Of a stretch of 64,000 nt of DNA, positions 4,644 through 46,215 are shown in pieces. The DNA is from Trichosphaerium sp. ATCC 40318. Taxonomy: Eukaryota > Protista > Tubulinea. The translations under genes and the position numbers were made by a program. The DNA lies in the NCBI GenBank assembly GCA_038496445.1, contig JALMLS010000379.1, positions 1-64,000 of the forward strand. The letters run 5' to 3'. How positions within the stretch are numbered: the stretch's first letter is position 1; each line of letters begins with the position of its first letter. Under the pieces are notes generated by a model. It had not been told where the DNA came from and searched no databases. It was given only the letters and a program-made list of their open reading frames with translations.

Positions 4644-5584
4644 AATACACAATTTAGGTTTACTAACACAATGCAATAAACATTTATGTAACTGTTTTAA
4701 CGCTTTTTTTTTTTCGTTTTTGGCTTTTCTTGTTGACCATCATTGAACAAGGGTTACTGACTTTCAAATAAAACAAGCCAAAAACAAAAATACAGAAAGC
4801 GAAAGAAGTAACTTCTAGTTTATTGCAAAAGGTTAACACTTATTCAGTAAACCAAACAAAATCTCCAAATCGGTACTATGGCTATTTGTGTCCTAGTTGG
4901 CTTTAGTTCATTATCTTCCAAGTGCCCAAAAGTTTCATTCTTGATTGAACAAGGCGCTTTACTCACACCCGTTAGATTGTAAGTTACTGTTGAGTTGAAA
5001 ATAAATAGATTTTGAATGAACCTTGTATTTCATAACCGCTGGAATAGAAGCTGCTTTGCAAACATAGATTCTAATATTTAAACGCTAGTGCTTCTCACTT
5101 TCCACACTAATCACATCATTGGTTTTAAGTACTATTCAAGAAATCGATAGCTTCAGAGGCTACATGTGAGATTCTCATTAGATTTTGTCCACAAGAGTGG
5201 AAGGAGTGAAAAAAAGTTAAGGGGTCTGTTTCGAAAATTGCCAAAAAAAAAATCAATCATGTGATTGAAACTATTCTCAATTACATTCGGAAAAAGTCGC
5301 TCAAGCAATAGATAGGTAGTTTTTTGTTGCATAGAACGTATTTTAAGCGATCAAGACATCCAACTGGCGCATTATTAAAGATATTGCACGACACAAAAAG
5401 TTAAAAAATCTTGAAAGTGTTTCACTCTCTTCTACGTAAGGAAACAATGCGTAGAGCACCAACAGCATCCAGAGAATGTTTTTCGTCGATATTCACAGTG
5501 ATGGGAAGTTTATTGACTCGATGTACATCACGTCAAAGCTTGTCAAAAGGCACTTTACATCCTCCACTAAGGAAGAAAACCAAT

Positions 5585-9452: not shown

Positions 9453-9871
9453 TGAACGATACAAACAGACTAAATAACGTAACTCGTGCGTCGGACTAAA
9501 AGTACATTAATTTTTTTCCGAAAAACAAACTCCGAACGTTTTGGGGTTAAGGATGGAACAAAATATCACAAACAGCAAATTTTATAACGGACTAGATAAA
9601 GTTCAAAAAGGGCAAAAATAAAACTGCCAGAAAGGAATGAGCAGTTTTAGAATGTTTTGTTCAAATTGTCTCCACGTGTTCCTGTTTAAAACCTGCGAGC
9701 ATACGTACACCGCTTATGCCAGAGAAACATACCACTTTAAGAAGGTGTAGTTATCGAGTTTTTATATTTTCTAGAGATCCGTCCTCGCCCCAAAAATAAA
9801 GCTTTACGCACAGGTATGTTCTCAAGGCTTGTAACGCCAAAAGAGGAAGAAATGACCAATCTCTTGGATTT

Positions 9872-15791: not shown

Positions 15792-18700
15792 ATGGCAGAA
15801 AACGAACAAACGAAGGAATCCCACAAGATCGAACTACAGTTCTTTGAGAACGTCTCAAAAGCTCTTAATGTGGACGCTGATACACATAGTAAAGCGAGTG
15901 AGCTTCTGAACAGGTTTTTAGAGCGCCAAACCACCAAAGTAAGCCGTTATTCCTTTCACACTCTTACATTTACGTAAAGAAACCTCAATTGGCGAAAATC
16001 TGGGCAATTTGTGCTCTATACGTAGTAGCGAGCAAATCATTACCAGGTAGCAGTTCTGTGCCATCTTATGTCTCCTTATCCCAACTACTGCGAGAAGCAG
16101 ACGTGAAGTACGCAAAAAAAAGCTTGTATTACACATTTATTTAACCGTGTTTGTTTCCTAGACTAATAGACTTCTTCACACCGCTTAAAAATTTCATGGA
16201 GGTACTTGGCCTCCCACAAAAATGCGTACAATTGGTTCAGAACCTAGAAAAAAAGTTCATGGTTATGAAGATACTATTTTCGAAATACGAGCAGGTTTAC
16301 AACACGCTTTTCATCAAGGTTACTGGTAAGTGTGAAACCCCAAAACAGAACCAAAAAAAAAAAAAAAAAGAAAATTGGCTCACGAGTTTCTAGGTTTATC
16401 CGGCGCTAAGACGAAGAGGCGTACACCATCACAAAAATCATTCGCGTTCGGCTGGTATTTATTCCTCATCACGAGAGGTACAGCAAGCGTGACTTTTGGG
16501 TTTTTTGTATTTTTTTTTGAAAATAGCATGACGCTGTTTTATTCTATTTTTTAACGTGTAAATCTCGTTATTGTGGTTCAAGAGTGCTTACATTATTTTT
16601 TTGAAAGGGAAACTTTTAAAAAACCCGCCAGACCTCATAGAATGTCTCCACTTGCTTCTGTGTTGTCTGGAATTCTCATTGGCTCATATGAAAGAGAACT
16701 TACGGTTACAGCCGCTTACAACACTTTTGAGTGCGTTTTTTTTTCTTTTTTCAAATAATATCACCTAACGCAGTTTAGATAACAAATCTACCACCGCTTT
16801 ACACTATGTATGTACTAAAACTATGAGAGGAGTAAATTATACACAAGTTGCTGTTATAAAGAATAGATTATTTATACCTCTAATGAAGCAGGTATGTGTG
16901 CGCAGAGTTCAAGCGTTTTTGATTGAAACAAATTAGCAATTTTCTTTTTTTTTTTTTTTTTTCGCTTTTTTTTTCCTTGTTTAGGAGTCAAACTCATCGT
17001 TCTTCTTTCTGTAGTTATGCGAATTGGGCTTTATTCAGTTTAATAAAATGGGACGTCCTCCATTGGCGTTATCCAAGAATGATTTTTTTCTTGGTGGTTG
17101 TATGGATAATTTCCTGGATGCAAACTATAGTAAACTAGATAAGGAATATGAAATAATGCATTTTGGATCATGCGATTTTGATGAACGTCTATTCATTAGG
17201 TGCGCCTTTCTATTTACCTTCGCCTACTTTATGGACTAGCGGTTGACTTGTGATTTAGTTATAATATGCAGTTGGCTTCACCTACAAAACGATATACTTC
17301 TTCGGTACACTTTTGACTTTTTAGTCTATTTTCGGATAAAACAAACAAAATACAAATTTCTTTTTTTGGATTTGTTCGATTTTGGTCTTTTTTTTTACCT
17401 GAACTTACGATCTGTTAGCGCCCTAATGCTCCATTGTCTCCAATTAGTGGTGCTGTGGAGAGTGTAAACTGGCTAACAAAACTTCTTTCGAAGCGACCTG
17501 ATAAAGCTAGTGATATCGCACTTACGTTTTTTAAAGCGTGTGCTACAAGTCCACAGAAACAAATTGAAGAGCGTGTGGAAACTTTGTTGTGTATGTGCTT
17601 TTACCCTGCTTTATTTTTCTTATTTCATGATAGCGTCAATTACATTCCAATCTCAGGAAGCTCTTAGAAAGACATTAGCTAGAAAATTGTATTTTTTGTA
17701 CGAACTTGTTTTTTTTTCTTGGGTTATCGTGTTGACTTACACTTTGTTTTAGGTTGCTTGAAGAAATTCTTCTCGGAGAGCAAAAGCGTCTCAAACAAGT
17801 AAGCAATGACACTATTTACTACTATCTTAGCTAACGCTTACGTCTTATTAGCATAACTTTACTACACTTCTCAATCATGATAAATTTCATCGGTCGTTGT
17901 TGGCTGGTTGTTTAGAAATTGTCATTTCTTCCTACAAAATCCTTCACATGGGATTCCCACAAGTTAGTAATAAGTTTGGTATAACACCATTCGATTTTTG
18001 CAAGATAATAGAATGTGTGGTTAAGCATACTCCTGACGACGTATCCTCATTGATAGCTTTTTAAATTTTTTTTTGCTTGAAATTTATATTTTAATGTATT
18101 AATGTTCCTTGACTTACTAAGATGCCTCGTCCAATTGTAAAAGATCTTGTAAGGATAGAAGAGAGTATATTAGAGTTTCATGCCTGGAAAGCAGATTCAC
18201 CATTATTTACATACCTTGATGGGCCACAACAAGAATACCTTAATAGTAAACTTGAAGGTATGTTTTTTTTTTGCTTTTTTTTTCTTGTTACTAATAACAC
18301 CTTCTAGAAACTGGAACTCCTAAAAAACCTACGCTATCTGCTTGTGAGGTATTCAGCACGCCCAAAAAGGCTAAGAATATCCCTACACCTCGTAAAAATA
18401 GAAATCTGTCAATTGAGTTATTTTTCAGAAAAGGTGTGTTTCTATAGTCCTTTGTTTACTCCTTTTATTAACTGTTTTGTCTTTCTAAAGTATCTCACTT
18501 GGCTTCATTACGTATAAGAAAACTTGCTGCTGACTTACAACTAGAACCACACGATATTAGACAGGTACATTTCTTATTTATTTTCTTCTCTTTTTTCTTT
18601 TTTTTTTTGGTCATATTTTCCTTTTTTAGTTTGGACTCTAGTCTCCTTACTCTTTGCTTGTAGATTGAATATGCGTTTTTATACATTTTAACACAAAAGA

Positions 18701-24121: not shown

Positions 24122-25453
24122 ATGAGTACTTTAGCCATTTCTCTTGAACAGGTGATAAGATACTATAATGAACACCATACGGAGTCATACAGCAAAATAA
24201 AGAAAGAACTACATCAAACGTTTATTAAACAAGTTGAAAGTATTCTAAATAACTCTAACACAAGTCTAATGCAACAAATCGATAAGCTTCTACTCCAACA
24301 CGTTGTTTCTGCCACAATGGGCGCTCCAACAAGCGAACACAGAGAGTACGCTAGTATCCAGTAAAACCCCAAAAATTGGCTACATTTCAAACTCTGTATG
24401 TTGTTTTGTTTTAATTGTTTGACTCATAGAGATCACGTGACAAACAAAGAACCAACCCTTGTAAGTATTCCTACAGAGGTTTTATCTATTATTTTACATC
24501 ACACAGAATCAAAATCAAGGTTTTCTGCAGCTCAGTCATGTCGTTTAATGGCAAATGTCATTCATGATGTTGTTGGTTATAAACGACTAAAAATATCAAC
24601 CATTTCAGATATTTTGAAGATTATCAAGTACAAAGGAGTAATGAAGTACAGCATAATTAGATTATGTGGGAGTATTCAAAATACATATTTTTCACTACTA
24701 TCTGGATGTTGTCACATCAAAATGTCAAGTAGACACAGCAGTCATATAACTGATGTTGATCTTAAAAACATGTCAGGTGTTAAACTCATTCACCTTCAAA
24801 ACAATCAACATATAACTGATGAAGGAATCAAAGCACTTGCTGGCGTTCACACTATAGATCTTCAAGGTACAAATATTACAGATGAAGGTGTCAAAGCGCT
24901 TAAAGGTGTTCATAAAATTTACCTGAGTGATTGCAAGTATGTAACAGATGAAGGAATCAAAGAACTTGCTGGTGTTCATACTATCGATCTTGAGGATTGT
25001 GAAAAGATATCAGATGAAGGAGTGAAGGCACTGAAGGGAGTTCACACCATTAATCTGTCCAACACCTCAGTGACAGATGAAAGCATTGTTGAGTTGAAAG
25101 GTGTTCACACAATTAGTCTTCGTAATTGTGAGAACATATCAGATGAAGGTGTCAAGGCACTGAAAGGTGTTCATAATATTAACCTCTGCCAGTGTTTTAA
25201 TATTTCAGATGAAGGCATCATGGCACTAAAAGGTGTTCATACGATTGATCTTTCGTGTACTGAAGCAACAAATGCATGTATGAGAAGCCTCAGAGGTGTT
25301 CATAGTATTAACCTTAGTCAGTGTCAGGACATATCAGATGAGGGTATTAAAGAACTAAAAGGAGTTCATACCATTGATCTTTGGAATACCTCGGTGACAC
25401 AGTACACCATTAAAGAACTTACTGGTGCTGTTAAAATTAATAGTAGATGGTAA
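24122..25453 (+). CDS. F-box-like plus leucine-rich repeat protein (copy A); single intron 24346-24429
   Basis: LVSIPTEVLSIIL F-box-like motif; about 10 repeats of ITDEGIKALxGVHTIDL. Confidence 0.85.
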
Positions 25454-25811: not shown

Positions 25812-27305
25812 CTAGTAGTATGTTCCGTTATAACCATTCAAGCATTCTTCTATGAAAAATACATAATAGTCAACTGGTTGAGCACGTACATCAAGCAATG
25901 TATGCACATTTGAACTGAGACAATGTACATCAATAGCAAAAAGAGCAGGTCTTAGCAAGTTGAGACCTTCACTTGTTAGGTGTTCACAATTGCTGACACC
26001 AATGGTATGAACACCCATTAGTGCTTTGATGCCTTCATCTGTAACTGAAGTACCCTTAAGGTTGATAGCATAAACTCCTGCAAGTGCTTTTAAACCTTCA
26101 TCTGTCACTGCAGTACCCGAGAGATCAATGATATGGACACCTCTTAGTGCTTTGATACCTTCATCTGTTATTGACGTATTTCCAACATTAATAACCCTAA
26201 CACCTGCCATGGCTTTGATGCCCTCGTCTGTCACTCCTGTTCTATTGACATAAATAGTATGAACGCCTTTCAGTGTTTTAATACCTTTATCGGTAACTTC
26301 AGTGCCTGACAGAACAATTCTATTATCTCCCTTTAATACCATAACACCGTCATCTGTTACTGAAGTACAGGAAAGGTCAATATCGTGAACACCTTGCAAT
26401 GATTTGATACCTTCATCTGTTATATTTTCGCACTCTCTGAGGTTTATAGTATGAACTCCAGCAAGTGCTTTGATTCCATCATCTGTCACTGTAGTCCGAG
26501 AGAGGTCAATAGTATGTATACCGCACAGTCCCTTGATACCTTCATCTGTAATGTGCTTACAACGTGTGAGGTTTATGGAATGGATACCTGCAAGTGCCTT
26601 CAGGTCATGATCATTTATAACACTACTTTTCTTATGCAACTCAGCTGTACTTCTAAGGAAGTTTGTATCAAGGTTGTTACACCCAGACAATAGTGAATAT
26701 AGAGAATTGTTTTCAACATTCAAAACTATTTTTGTGTTGTTCATGGCACCCTTGTACTGTCTGACCTTTAAGATATCTGGGAGGTCATAAATATACACCT
26801 CTTTGTATCCTACAACATCGTGGATGATATCAGACATCAACTGACATGACTGAGCAATAGCAAATCTCTGTTTTGCATCTGTATGATGCAAAATAGTTGA
26901 AATAACTTCTGGAGGAAAACTAAGTATATTTGGCGTGTTGTGTTGTATTGTTTGTGCTCTTATTGATCATCTTTAGTAAAGCGAGTGTATAGTGAGTACG
27001 TACTGTCGTGTTTGCTTGAGATTTGGTAACACCATGTCTTCTGAAAGCGTTGAGCGTTGTTTTAGCATAGTTGCGCCCCTGGAAAGTACTTCGGGGCGTA
27101 TGGTTGCACTAACGGCTGTATCGATGCTTTTGGATAGATATTTATCAAGTTGTTGTACAAGGCTCGTATTTGAAATGTTTAAGATTGTTTTAAGTCGTTC
27201 TACGAATATTTCAGGTTGCTTTGCAATAATTTTATTGAATTCGTCTTTGTGGTTCTTCCTGTAGTATGTGATCGCTTGATCAACTGAAACACAAGGTAAA
27301 TACAT
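25812..27305 (-). CDS. F-box-like plus leucine-rich repeat protein (copy B), convergent paralog
   Basis: Exon 1 (26973-27305 ORF) is homologous to 24122-24345 (QAITYY...ILNISNTSLVQQLDK). ILSFPPEVISTIL motif and the same LRR unit. Confidence 0.85.
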
Positions 27306-33856: not shown

Positions 33857-34230
33857 AAGATTAAGGTGTAAAAATTAAAAAAAAATACCAACTAGTTAAC
33901 ATAAAGATAGTCGCGTTAAATAAAAAAAGAATCTTTACCATGATGAACATCCCTATCCCGTCATCTTGTTTTCTTTCAATAGATACACTGAGCTCTAAAT
34001 AAAGCTGCAAGAATAAAACGATCTTTATCATACTATTTTCAATGCCAAAACTGACACATTGTGGACCTTTTTTTTTTAATTCTGGCCTCGTTTTACACAT
34101 CGCGTGATTCTCCTGCCGTTGTTATTGTTGCCAAGCAGGAAACTTCCGACGTTGGATTCTGACTCACCATAGTCAAAATAACACGAATGGTATCTTTTTA
34201 ACGCTATTTATTGATACAAGCTGTATGGTA

Positions 34231-36790
34231 TTAGTGTTTACGATTAGTTTTGACAATGCCTGGCGTTGGTCCAACAACGTCAATCATAACGTTAAGCAAG
34301 CAAGGTTTCTTACAAGATAAGGCCTTTGGTAGCATCTCAGTTAAAGTTTCTGGAGTATGAGCAAAGAAACCCTAAATGATAAAGTTATCTCATATAATTC
34401 TCATTAATTTCTAGTTCGTACAACTCCACCAAAGCTCTCCATGATTTTCTCATATCTTGACTCCGGCATCAAAGCAGTTGCTGGTATTGTTTCTAAATCA
34501 TCTAAAGACTCCAGACCACTATAATTTAGTCAGTAAATAACACAAGTTTATGAACAAAAGTAGTGGCTGCCAACAAGTGTACCTATAAATACCATTGTTG
34601 TTAATGACAATAATTGTTATTGGAAGTTTGTATCGGCACATAACTTCTATTTCCATGCCTACAAAATGACTGTTTTAACAAACAAGCAAAGCGACAATAG
34701 TTTATTCTTACCACAGAACCCAAATGAAGAGTCTCCTTGTATACTCACTACCTTTCTATCAGGATGAGCAAAAGCAGCTGCAATGGAGTAGCCAAGACCT
34801 AGTTGAGAAGGTTACTAAAGAATTCGAATCGTTTGTAATGTATGGCGTACCTAGTCCCATTGTGGCCATTGTACCAGCGTCTAGACGGCTTCTAGGCGTA
34901 TAGTTTGGAATGACAACGCGACCAGTGATAAAGTTAAGGAGATTTAAATCAAGGAAGAAAAATTAAAGCTTTGAATGTTGGTGACATTAAAGGATATATG
35001 TCCATTGTGTTGGCACCCTCGTTTACTAGTATGACATCCCTTGGTAATTGTTTTCTTATTGTATCTAGCACATAATGGTATTTCATTGGTACACTAGAAT
35101 CAGCGCATTGTTTAGCTACACGTCCACGGTTTTGATCCCTCTTGGCAGCTACAAAAAAACGTTAGATACAAAATAGCCTTGGGTTGGGTCATACCGAGAG
35201 CTTTCCACCATTCGCCGTCTTTATCAAGTTTGACGATGTTGTCAGTTTTCTTATTTAATTGAGATATAATACTCGTTATATAACCGGGTAAATAAAGTGC
35301 TGAAGCCCTATTTGTTGACATTTCTTCTAAACTAATATCGATTTGAATAATTTTTACATCAGGGTTGAATCTTGGTGATTCTCCAAATCCAAACATCCAA
35401 TTCAATCTAGCTCCGGCTAATAGAATAACATCAGCTTCCCTTAAGGCAAGAGATCTAGCAGGACCCACTAAAATAATAAAATAAGGGAGATGGAGAGTCA
35501 GTATCGAAGAAGAGATAAAAACAAAAGTAATGTTGCTAACCAGAAAGAGGATGATCGTCAGGTATGAGACCTTTACCCATTGGTGAAGGTAAGAACGGCA
35601 TGTTTCTTGATTCGACAAATGTTGTCAACTCTTTTTCAGCTCTAATGGATATTATTATTAGCAAGTCTATTAGAAACGAAACATGTTACATACCTTGCAA
35701 AAGCAGCACCTTTGCCGAAGATTAGAAGAGGTTTTTTGGCGGATGAAAGGAGCTCCAAAGCCTATCGTTGTCTTATTTAATCATTGCAAACACAAGTACA
35801 CGATTTAGGTTACCTTTGAGATATCTGATTCTGAAGCAACTGGTTTGGGACAAGGAGGACATTTATCTAAAATTTTAATTCCATCTTTGGGAGTTGAAAG
35901 AAGTGCATCTCTCTTGATTTTGTCTTAGAACCGATAACATTTAAATATAACAGTAAAATACGTACTGTAATTTCTATATAAGAACCTCCAGGTCTTCCAT
36001 AGGTTGCTATTAAAATGTTACAAGACCGTTAAAAACAACGATAATGTTAACGTTTTCGCTGAATTCATACCTTTGCGAACAGCTTGCTCAATATAGTATG
36101 GTGCGTGGTTGATATCTGTAATGCGCATAGCATACTTGCAATAAGGTCTAGAGCCTTCTATTTGGTTTGCCTCCTATACAAAGGCAATAGTATTAAAATC
36201 CATTGTAAACAAGTCATTCAAAAATCTCAAGCAATGTCATTTCATGTACGTACTTGAAAAGCTCCTGCGTTTACTCTATGAGAACTACATGCTGCACTTA
36301 TAAGCAGCATTGGCCAGCAATTAGCAGTAGCGTTGTATAACCCAGGAAGAGCGTGGAGCATGCCTAACAAGTTTAGTATTTAAAGTACATCAAACGGCTT
36401 TTTATATCTCTAAAGCACTATTCTACGCGTTTACCAAACGGTTGGTGCGTTGTTTGTTCAAATGTCAAAAAAAAAAATGTACCAGGTCCAGCAACTGTCA
36501 AACAACACGCTAAGGTTTCAGTGAGGTATCCCATTATGCTTGCTGCGTAACTTGCAGCCTTAGTTGTTAGCTATAGTACTCAAGTTTTAGAAATACACAC
36601 CTGTTCATTTCTCATTGCCACAAACGTTATATCTTCCTTCTGCATAGCGGCAGCAAGTGGAGTAACGGGTACACCAACGATTCCAAATACATATTTTACT
36701 CCTTGTGCTTTTAAGCTCTACAATCTCTGTCAGGCTTTGAAAGAGCTTAATGCCGCGAAGTACCTTAGAAATAAGCGTAAAAGAGTCCAT
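34231..36790 (-). CDS. HACL1: 2-hydroxyacyl-CoA lyase / oxalyl-CoA decarboxylase family (TPP enzyme); exact C-terminus uncertain
   Basis: [73 protein letters not shown]...NNNG. Confidence 0.92.
34925..34997 (-). other. U12-type AT-AC intron in HACL1
   Basis: Minus strand reads ATATCCTTT...TCCTTAAC-TTTATC-AC. Removal restores the conserved EGANTMDI|GR. Confidence 0.92.
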
Positions 36791-36875
36791 TGTGCAATAG
36801 TACAACAACTTTTCTGAGAGAGCGTTAAGTCACTTGGGAAATGTAAGTTGGTTGAGTACAAAAATTAGCATCACG

Positions 36876-43829: not shown

Positions 43830-46215
43830 ATGAGTATGTTTCAACTCTTTACGCTATTCTTCGTTTTGTTTGTTGTATTGCAGGTCGAAGGTAAAATGTT
43901 GTTACATTCCTTATTGACACCAAGCAACGCTTCAAAGTCGTCAATCATTCTTCTCCCACCTGTATTTAGAGGCCGTGCGTGTTTCCATCAAAGTGGCAAA
44001 GTTGTTTTTAATACAATCAGGTACAACTCAGATGCTGGAAACATCTCTGACGACTTTTATTTGTGCGACAAAGAACATCAGCCCTACTTGTTTATTTTAG
44101 GGAATGGCTCAATATTAGACTTCATAGCAAACACGTACCATGATCCACGTATGTAAAAATAATACTGTTACATTTACACTTGTTTTCCTTAGCACTTCAA
44201 AAAGCACTTAAAAAGCACATGATAAAACGGACGCTTCACATCTAGTTTATTTTTGCAGTTGGCCAATTTCCATACCCTCCTCCTTATTGTGCGTTACATG
44301 CAGATCAAAAGATTGTACTGCAAATGTACATAATGATGTGACATACAACAACAATGAATGTCACAACAACACAACAACAAAGTGACACAACAACACAACA
44401 AGCTGACGACAGTGGACAAGTGCACAGTATGGCAAAATCTAATAATAGTACTACTCAATAAAAAGAACAAAGTTCGCTGTTCTCAAACTTTGAACCAGAA
44501 AAATCAATCCACACGCCAGATAAGCCAGAAAAAAAGACGTACGTTTGAGTTTGTGCGTTTTGGTAGTTTTCACTCACATGTTATTTTAGGCTGCACTTTT
44601 ATCCTCGAAGGTACACCACACACAAAGATAATGCTAATTTGATTAGTTTAGCGGAAAAGGCTACTCTGGATTTGTGAATAAGTGCAGTTTTTTTAATGTC
44701 ATGGAGTAATATTTTCTGATTCTCAGACCATTGTGAGCTTTTACTGCACACAATGTGTACATATTTCTGAAGGCTGTGTTAAAATTGTACTGTTGTACAT
44801 TTTGTCGTCAGCTTGTTGTGTTGTTGTGTCACTTTGTTGTTGTGTTATTGTGACATTTCATTATTGTGTTGTTGTATGTCGTGTCATTCTGTGTATCTTG
44901 CAGTGCAATCTTTTGATCTGCATGTAACGCACAATATATTGCTTGTACACGTTTCTGCGTGTTTCTAGAAGGAGACCCATTTCTGCTGAAGCTATCCTTG
45001 ACGTAATCGATATGGGAGACTTGTTAGTTAATGGACAAATAGTTGATACTACAATTGTACCACCCATCTTGGACAGTATAAGTACCTCAATCAGATTACT
45101 CAATTTGTCATTTATTCTTCTTATTAGTTGGAGTTTGTATTACAGTACCTCCTGGACTTAATGCAAGTAGGATTGACCTGTTTATAAAGTACGAATAAAC
45201 AATATATACTACTAACACTATTTCTACAAAAAACTTTATTGCTGTACTGTCTTACAGTTTAACACTATTTAGATCTAGTGTTGTAGTAATCATTGATGAC
45301 CTTGAATACTCGAGCTTACTTCCAAATGAAATTGGTAATGAAATATTACGTCGCATGACATGGTTTATTTTTGGAATAGGTTGTGAGAAATTTGAATGTC
45401 AATCAAACAGTTGTAGTAAATGGAACTATGGAAGGTAAAATTTTCAATGCAAGTACAATAGTGATTCAGAATGATGTTATCATCTTGGGAAATTTAACTG
45501 TTAATGGTGCGTGGATTCACCGCTATTTTTTAGGTATCTCGTTCTTGTTTCATTCTCATTTGTTTTGTTTAAGGATCAATTACACTTGATGCAAACTCAT
45601 CGTTATTGACAACACAAGGTTCCTTATCAGCAACGGACAGCATAAAAGTATTATTGGATGATAGCAAAACATATTATGATGGTGAAGAAGTTACTCGTGT
45701 GATTGCTACAGACCTCAAAGTAAGCACATAGACTATTACAATATTTTTACATTTAATTCACTTAATTAGAACACGACCATAGAACTTATTGGAGGAAGGT
45801 CACCTGTACGCTAAACCTTTCTTTATATATTGTATTGTAGCGCTTCTTGTTAAATCTTATTTTGTTGTTTAGAAACCATGTCAAGAACTCCAATCAAAAA
45901 TAATACCCACGTCGGAAGGCTTTGCATTTGTTGTATCACTCAACAACGATCCATGTCACGAAAACTCTTCTGATCACGTAAACTATGCTATTGTCTTGTC
46001 TTGTATTGCTGTTGGAGTTATAGTTATAGCTGTCATTGTCGCTGTCGTCATGTATGCTATCCAGTACGTCATTTTACAATCAAAGTCGTTAAATCCTCAT
46101 TTATTCTAGACAAAACAAGAGAGGACGATTTTCCATTCAAAGCTTTATGACAACTACTGAGGACGTACTTTGCAATAATGAAAACATCACAACAAACGGC
46201 TCTAAACATCGCTAG
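43830..46215 (+). pseudogene. Family copy 2, pseudogene
   Basis: Central exons deleted, MITE inserted in an exon, TAC>TAA near 45196 and a 2-nt deletion near 45398 relative to copy 1. Confidence 0.8.
44287..44934. mobile_element. Non-autonomous TIR element (Tc1/mariner-type MITE), 648 bp, TA target duplication
   Basis: Ends TTGTGCGTTACATGCAGATCAAAAGATTG / CAATCTTTTGATCTGCATGTAACGCACAA, with imperfect TIRs of ~130 bp. TA at 44285-86 and 44935-36. Excision restores the codons P-P-Y-I-A seen in paralogs. Confidence 0.92.

What the first reader, a model, noticed from the sequence alone, without database searches (positions are those of the whole stretch)
34925..34997. AT-AC minor-spliceosome (U12) intron in HACL1
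Seen: a 73-nt minus-strand interruption starting ATATCCTTT, with TCCTTAAC just before a terminal AC. Removing it restores the conserved [10 protein letters not shown] motif, and I found no GT-AG alternative that does. Established: these are the U11-recognised donor and U12 branch consensus. Inference: this compact protist keeps a functional minor spliceosome, which many protist lineages have lost; GT-AG-only annotation would mis-model this gene.
Basis: partly seen in the sequence, partly recalled or inferred. Interest (0 to 1): 0.8.

Follow-up and report, generated by a model that had tools for sequence, protein, structure and literature searches.

The report
Real U12-type AT-AC intron in HACL1
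A 73-base interruption in a 2-hydroxyacyl-CoA lyase gene is a genuine minor-spliceosome (U12-type) AT-AC intron that is removed in RNA, a correct but ordinary find because such introns are already known in many eukaryotes.

Summary
On the minus strand, 34997..34925 begins ATATCCTTT, carries TCCTTAAC with its branch adenosines 10-11 nt from the 3' end, and ends in AC. Removing it joins ...NEGANTMD-I|[18 protein letters not shown], which aligns without gaps to 13 HACL/oxalyl-CoA decarboxylase homologues. It is intron 11 of 15 in a 546-aa gene; the other 14 are short GT-AG introns.

One transcript contig from a public run joins 34924 to 34998 exactly. Its anchor is only 24 nt, there is no microhomology at the joint, and no contig covers the intron. 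Contigs from three runs also splice out seven of the 14 GT-AG introns.

Frame-keeping GT-AG alternatives exist, but they delete invariant residues.

A second U12-type intron (GT-AG subtype, 18041-18121) splits an RB_A domain in the same window. Donor, branch site and 3' site together occur twice, against 0.12 expected.

No minor snRNA lies in this window. Unchecked first-stage notes report 23 U12-related items elsewhere in this genome, including U12 and U4atac-like genes.

The intron position is absent from six orthologues (mollusc, fish, two fungi, two dictyostelids). A HACL1 tree places the organism with Amoebozoa, where U12 introns are already documented.

Verdict: real, correctly interpreted, and a new member of a known kind.

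The parts
34925..34997 (-). U12-type AT-AC intron, 73 nt, phase 2, between codon positions 2 and 3 of Ile389. It is intron 11 of 15.
   Evidence: Sequence; gene model; joint 34924/34998 in a transcript contig of run X1.
34989..34997 (-). 5' splice site ATATCCTTT, a perfect match to the U12-type donor consensus [A/G]TATCCTT.
   Evidence: the consensus is as quoted in Larue et al..
34933..34940 (-). Branch-point sequence TCCTTAAC. Its adenosines lie at -11 and -10 from the 3' end of the intron, and only TTTATC separates the motif from the terminal AC.
34948..34956 (-). A second, upstream branch-site-like element, TTCCTTGAT, with its A at about -25. Which of the two elements is used is not known.
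34998..35148 (-). Upstream exon 11, ending ...[11 protein letters not shown] plus the first two bases (AT) of the split Ile389 codon.
   Evidence: Contigs of X1 and X7 cover it with 0 differences.
34851..34924 (-). Downstream exon 12, beginning with the T that completes the Ile389 codon, then [24 protein letters not shown].
   Evidence: 24 nt of the X1 contig lie on 34901-34924.
34231..36790 (-). HACL1-like (HACL/oxalyl-CoA decarboxylase family) gene. It has 16 exons and encodes 546 aa. Fourteen of its 15 introns are GT-AG introns of 42-119 nt.
   Evidence: Gene model; Pfam TPP_enzyme_N and TPP_enzyme_M on single exons; PDB relatives; 47-53% identity over the full length to HACL1 proteins; seven of the 14 GT-AG introns are spliced out in contigs.
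18041..18121 (+). Second U12-type intron in the window, of the GT-AG subtype: GTATCCTC...TTCCTTGAC, with 9 nt after the branch A up to and including the terminal AG. It lies in an RB pocket A domain.
   Evidence: Sequence. The flanking exons match Pfam RB_A profile positions 105-163 and 165-195.

Best explanation
The 73-nt segment 34997..34925 on the minus strand is a U12-type (minor-spliceosome) AT-AC intron in a 2-hydroxyacyl-CoA lyase gene. By analogy with the well-studied system, U11 would pair with the donor ATATCCTTT and U12 with the branch site TCCTTAAC, bulging an adenosine 10-11 nt from the 3' AC. U4atac/U6atac.U5 would then catalyse removal, joining AT|T into the Ile389 codon of the conserved [11 protein letters not shown] motif. 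What is shown here: the sequence signals, the restoration of the frame and motif, and the removal of the segment in RNA at exactly these boundaries. What is inferred: which snRNPs do the work.
For: The donor matches the consensus perfectly and the branch motif sits at the canonical short distance from AC, with no polypyrimidine tract. Splicing gives a gap-free alignment to 13 homologues across the site. Unspliced, the frame hits stop codons. A contig of run X1 (depth 2.3) joins 34924/34998, skipping 73 nt, with GT..AT on the + strand (AT..AC on the minus strand), no shared letters at the joint and zero depth inside the intron. Contigs of X1, X4 and X7 also splice seven of the 14 GT-AG introns, which shows they derive from mature RNA. 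The combined signal occurs twice in the window against 0.12 expected. The second instance interrupts RB_A exactly between profile positions 163 and 165. The phase is 2, in line with the known bias of U12 introns away from phase 0.
Against: The RNA support is a single low-depth assembled contig. Its 24-nt anchor on the downstream exon is shorter than the 31 nt the tool asks for before a record counts as bridging. No U11, U12, U4atac or U6atac gene is in the window, and none was checked by me elsewhere in the genome. Dependence on the minor spliceosome is inferred from sequence signals only.
Confidence: 0.93

Rival explanations
1. It is an AT-AC intron removed by the major (U2-type) spliceosome, as a small class of AT-AC introns is.
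For: The terminal dinucleotides alone do not decide the class. No minor snRNA was verified by me.
Against: The donor is ATATCCTTT and the branch site TCCTTAAC, 10-11 nt from the 3' end. These are the U11 and U12 pairing motifs, not the degenerate U1/U2-type signals. Six of the 14 GT-AG introns carry a strict CTRAY branch-like motif 12-34 nt upstream of AG and others only near-matches; this intron has none. A second intron with the same motif pair lies in the window.
Confidence: 0.03
2. The gene is really spliced at a nearby GT-AG pair (34985..34892 or 34985..34889, or 35016..34881), and the AT-AC reading is a coincidence.
For: These GT-AG pairs keep an open frame.
Against: They delete 7 to 21 residues, including the invariant G-R and P-R of ...MDIGRxxxxxxxPRxRLDAG, which is gap-free in all 13 homologues. 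The transcript contig uses 34924/34998.
Confidence: 0.02
3. The joint is an artefact: reverse-transcriptase template switching, contig mis-assembly, or a genome with and without a 73-nt insertion.
For: There is only one contig, at depth 2.3, with a 24-nt anchor, and the run type is only guessed to be RNA.
Against: No letters are shared at the joint (both = 0), and template switching needs such microhomology. The boundaries coincide to the base with consensus splice signals and with frame restoration. The contigs of the same gene laid from X1, X4 and X7 skip seven of its GT-AG introns.
Confidence: 0.02

Closest known systems
Canonical U12-type AT-AC introns of animals, plants, Acanthamoeba and early-diverging fungi
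   Same: The donor is /ATATCCTT. The branch site is TCCTTAAC close to the 3' end with no polypyrimidine tract. The termini are AT-AC and the phase is non-zero. The intron is a rare minority among GT-AG introns of the same gene (1 of 15).
   Different: It is very short (73 nt), in keeping with the 42-119 nt introns of this gene. It sits in HACL1 at a position where none of six sampled orthologues has any intron, so it is not one of the widely conserved ancient U12 positions as far as sampled.
Physarum polycephalum expanded minor-intron system (Larue, Elias and Roy, bioRxiv 10.1101/2020.10.12.336362)
   Same: It is a probable amoebozoan host. The introns are short. Unchecked first-stage notes report many U12-type introns in this genome.
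   Different: Physarum U12 introns use a derived TTTGA branch motif. Only 20 of 3,648 perfect-donor introns there have the classic CCTT[G/A]AC. Both U12-type introns in this window carry the classic motif. No TA-flanked inverted-repeat signature and no repeated copy of the intron was seen.
Protostelium aurantium and Pelomyxa schiedti minor introns (Larue and Roy 2023, PMC10639083)
   Same: These are Amoebozoa with 265 and 90 predicted minor introns. They show that such introns are already catalogued in this supergroup.
   Different: Whether the window comes from either species, or from one already in that survey, could not be determined.

Membership tests
U12-type (minor-spliceosome) intron | 5' splice site matching [A/G]TATCCTT from intron position +1 | tested here: met
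   ATATCCTTT at 34997-34989.
U12-type (minor-spliceosome) intron | Branch-point sequence TCCTT[A/G]AC close to the 3' splice site, with no polypyrimidine tract | tested here: met
   TCCTTAAC at 34940-34933, with the adenosines at -11 and -10. Only TTTATC lies between the motif and the terminal AC.
U12-type (minor-spliceosome) intron | Terminal dinucleotides AT-AC or GT-AG | tested here: met
   AT at 34997-34996 and AC at 34926-34925.
U12-type (minor-spliceosome) intron | Removed from RNA at exactly these boundaries | tested here: met
   One X1 transcript contig joins 34924/34998. Its anchor is 24 nt and there is no coverage inside the intron. The support is thin and raw reads were not available.
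U12-type (minor-spliceosome) intron | Splicing depends on U11, U12 and U4atac/U6atac snRNPs present in the organism | not testable with these tools
   No snRNA was found in the window at the gathering threshold or at E<=1. U12 and U4atac-like genes elsewhere in the genome are reported only in unchecked first-stage notes, and there are no notes for U11 or U6atac.
HACL1 / oxalyl-CoA decarboxylase family (ThDP enzymes) | Three-domain ThDP architecture (TPP_enzyme_N, M and C) with full-length similarity to HACL/OXC | tested here: met
   Pfam N and M domains match single exons. PDB HACL/OXC chains match with E values from 6.5e-19. The 546-aa product aligns end to end at 47-53% identity to proteins carrying all three domains.
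HACL1 / oxalyl-CoA decarboxylase family (ThDP enzymes) | Eukaryotic HACL1 orthology rather than bacterial OXC | tested here: inconclusive
   In the tree, the window protein falls in a 100/99 clade with dictyostelid HACL proteins and EukProt transcriptome proteins. Identity to bacterial proteins is just as high, about 50-53%. The C-terminus ...KTNRKH is not an obvious peroxisomal PTS1.

The most novel reading that the evidence does not exclude
The intron is a lineage-specific gain, not an ancient relic. On this reading it would belong to a genome-wide expansion of U12-type introns in an amoebozoan that, unlike Physarum, kept the canonical branch site and U12 pairing. That would be a second, independent and mechanistically different case of minor-intron proliferation.
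Probability: 0.15. Interest if true: 0.65.

Novelty: new member of a known kind. Interest (0 to 1): 0.25.

Why it matters
For annotation, a gene finder restricted to GT-AG or GC-AG would truncate this gene or delete part of the ThDP-enzyme core motif. AT-AC sites therefore need to be allowed for this genome. For biology, the spliced junction and a second U12-type intron 17 kb away show that this short-intron, probably amoebozoan, organism uses minor-type splice signals. This adds one data point to the patchy distribution of the minor spliceosome among protists. The position is not shared with six orthologues, so it could bear on minor-intron gain versus loss, but only in a genome-wide analysis. 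On its own, the intron is a routine instance of a well-described class.

Tried and rejected
- **snRNA search in the window:** Rfam at gathering and at E<=1 gave only a chance FuFi-1 match.
- **Single-motif enrichment:** counts of the donor alone and the branch site alone are at chance level. This window does not show a high U12 density.
- **Other candidate U12 introns:** 5384..5206 (ATATCTTT...CCCCTTAAC...AC) has no coding frame on either side. The regions at 9546 and 44893-45018 did not look like introns in coding sequence.
- **Physarum as the source:** rejected, because both U12-type introns here have the classic branch motif, which is nearly absent in Physarum.
- **Mobile-element origin:** the intron is not repeated elsewhere in the window.
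- **Public annotation of this gene:** the window's own protein did not appear in three homologue searches, so the mis-modelling claim could not be tested.
- **Orthologue loci that gave nothing:** the nearest full-length representatives turned out to be intronless metagenomic or transcript contigs, or had no DNA on record. The Lingula locus stopped before the motif.
- **Protein atlas search:** it gave only bacterial fragment clusters.
- **Paper search:** 'HACL1' with 'minor intron' found no paper.
- **Species name:** it could not be determined, because run and organism names are coded.

Full report
**Observation.** Read on the minus strand, the window shows ...GTAAACGAGGGTGCCAACACAATGGACAT|ATATCCTTTAATG...AAATCTCCTTAACTTTATCAC|TGGTCGCGTTGTC.... 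The interruption is 34997..34925, 73 nt. It begins with ATATCCTTT and contains TCCTTAAC at 34940-34933, so the two adenosines lie at -11 and -10 counted from the last intron base. It ends in AC, with only TTTATC between the branch motif and that AC. A second branch-like element, TTCCTTGAT, lies further upstream at 34956-34948.

**Gene context.** I built the gene model from the sequence and from the joints seen in transcript contigs. The CDS runs from 36790 to 34231 on the minus strand, with 16 exons and a 546-aa product. The 15 introns are 42-119 nt long. Fourteen are GT-AG with donors such as GTACG, GTATG or GTAAG. Six of these carry a strict CTRAY branch-like motif 12-34 nt upstream of the AG, and several others carry near-matches. 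The AT-AC segment is intron 11, phase 2, and splits the Ile389 codon (AT|T).

Single exons hit Pfam TPP_enzyme_N and TPP_enzyme_M and PDB chains of 2-hydroxyacyl-CoA lyase/synthase and oxalyl-CoA decarboxylase. The whole product aligns end to end at 47-53% identity with HACL1-type proteins. The name HACL1-like is therefore justified at family level. The C-terminus (...KTNRKH) is not an obvious PTS1.

**Is it an intron, and at these boundaries?** Left in, the segment reads ...[20 protein letters not shown] and then hits a stop codon. Removed at AT/AC, the product reads [34 protein letters not shown]. This aligns without a single gap to 13 homologues from animals, fungi, dictyostelids, a ciliate, a bacterium and unnamed protist transcriptomes.

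I enumerated every GT/GC-AG and AT-AC pair between the two flanking introns that keeps the frame open. GT-AG alternatives do exist (34985..34892, 34985..34889, 35016..34881). Each removes 7 to 21 residues, including the invariant Gly-Arg and Pro-Arg of the motif.

**RNA evidence.** Only Logan contigs were available, and the run and organism names are coded. I laid four runs on 34150-36850. One contig of run X1 (200 nt, depth 2.3, no differences over its 151 nt on exon 11) joins 34924 to 34998. It skips exactly 73 nt, with ends GT..AT on the + strand, which is AT..AC on the gene's strand. No letters are shared across the joint, which argues against template switching. The depth bins show no coverage inside the intron.

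Contigs of X1, X4 and X7 also skip seven of the 14 GT-AG introns, at 34372-34421, 34519-34582, 34659-34711, 34799-34850, 35149-35194, 36559-36600 and 36718-36763. The contigs therefore come from spliced RNA of this species or a very close strain. The weak point is that there is only one contig, and it has 24 nt on the downstream exon. That is below the 31 nt the tool recommends before a record counts as bridging.

**Chance.** The donor octamer alone (4 seen, 3.94 expected) and the branch octamer alone (4 seen, 4.17 expected) are at background level. The ordered combination of donor, 20-300 nt, CCTT[AG]AC, 5-14 nt and A[CG] occurs twice, against 0.12 expected in first-order Markov simulations. 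Only 1 of 300 simulations reached two. Both instances sit at positions where removal restores a conserved protein domain.

**Second U12-type intron.** The other instance is 18041-18121 on the + strand: GTATCCTCATTG...GTTCCTTGACTTACTAAG, with the branch A at -10. It contains an in-frame stop. Its flanking exons match Pfam RB_A at profile positions 105-163 and 165-195, so it is a true intron, of the GT-AG U12 subtype by its signals. It had been noted separately by a first-stage reader. I could not lay reads on it.

**Minor spliceosome components.** Nothing in this window matches any snRNA family at the gathering threshold or at E<=1. Earlier first-stage notes on the same genome mention a U12 snRNA gene with an intron, a U4atac-like RNA, and 23 U12-related items, including 'very high density' claims. 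There are no notes on U11 or U6atac. These notes are unchecked, and I could not read those pieces. They are leads, not evidence. In this window the density is modest: 1 of 15 introns in HACL1 and two U12-type introns in 64 kb.

**Which organism?** The name is hidden. A maximum-likelihood tree of 42 HACL/OXC proteins places the window's protein in a clade supported at 100/99. That clade holds all seven named dictyostelid sequences and several EukProt transcriptome proteins, and the window's sister is one of those transcriptome proteins at 98/95. The best identity to anything is 53%.

This points to Amoebozoa, but it rests on a single gene. Physarum polycephalum is unlikely. Its U12 introns use a derived TTTGA branch motif, and the classic motif occurs in only 20 of 3,648 perfect-donor introns, whereas both U12-type introns here carry the classic motif. 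Minor introns are already documented in Amoebozoa: Physarum with more than 20,000, Protostelium aurantium with 265 and Pelomyxa schiedti with 90. The supergroup is a known home of this system.

**Intron position in orthologues.** I fetched genomic loci and mapped the exons. The motif region is uninterrupted in six orthologues:
- Lottia gigantea (exon INNMIP...HLPRHR)
- Betta splendens (exon covering aa 356-407)
- Mucor saturninus (its single intron lies at aa 221/222)
- Entrophospora sp.
- Dictyostelium purpureum (its single intron lies at aa 158/159)
- Tieghemostelium lacteum (intronless)

As far as sampled, this is not one of the deeply conserved U12 positions. Gain in this lineage and loss elsewhere cannot be told apart without closer relatives. 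The proteins closest to the window exist only as transcripts. The intron has no other copy in the window and no terminal inverted repeat of the kind proposed for Physarum.

**Verdict.** This is a bona fide U12-type AT-AC intron, removed in RNA at the predicted junction, in an organism that has at least one more U12-type intron nearby. It is a new instance of a thoroughly known class in a supergroup where that class is already catalogued. Its main practical value is for gene modelling. A broader story about minor-intron abundance in this genome may exist, but it has to be established genome-wide, not from this locus.

Noticed in passing
window 18041-18121 (+): A U12-type intron of the GT-AG subtype (GTATCCTC...TTCCTTGAC, branch A at -10) splits an RB pocket A domain exactly between Pfam RB_A profile positions 163 and 165. 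No RNA check was possible.
   Followed up: partly
window 34231-36790 (-): The HACL1-like protein groups at 100/99 support with dictyostelid and unnamed EukProt transcriptome proteins, which suggests an amoebozoan source. It is no more than 53% identical to anything in the databases, and its own protein was not found there. Its C-terminus, ...KTNRKH, lacks an obvious PTS1.
   Followed up: partly
window 34207-34659 and 35104-35430 compared with run X1 contigs: X1 transcript contigs differ from the window at several bases (for example 34246, 34316, 34624, 35238-35241 and 35274) and by one inserted T after 34221. X4 and X7 contigs are nearly identical to the window. This looks like strain or allele variation among the public samples.
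   Followed up: no
L004:7311-9296 (Lottia gigantea HACL1 locus): About 20 tandem copies of a 63-78-nt exon-like segment encoding VDICVEE...GLVGNI (aa 298-319) lie between two exons of the Lottia gene.
   Followed up: no
L002:835-2624 (Entrophospora sp. HACL locus): The 802-aa annotated product contains an internal duplication. Residues about 88-350 match two adjacent stretches of DNA at about 98% identity. This is either a tandem partial duplication or an assembly or annotation artefact.
   Followed up: no
window 24398-25453 (+) and 25812-26891 (-): Two long intron-free ORFs, convergently oriented, of 351 and 359 aa. Both carry LRR_6-type leucine-rich repeats.
   Followed up: no
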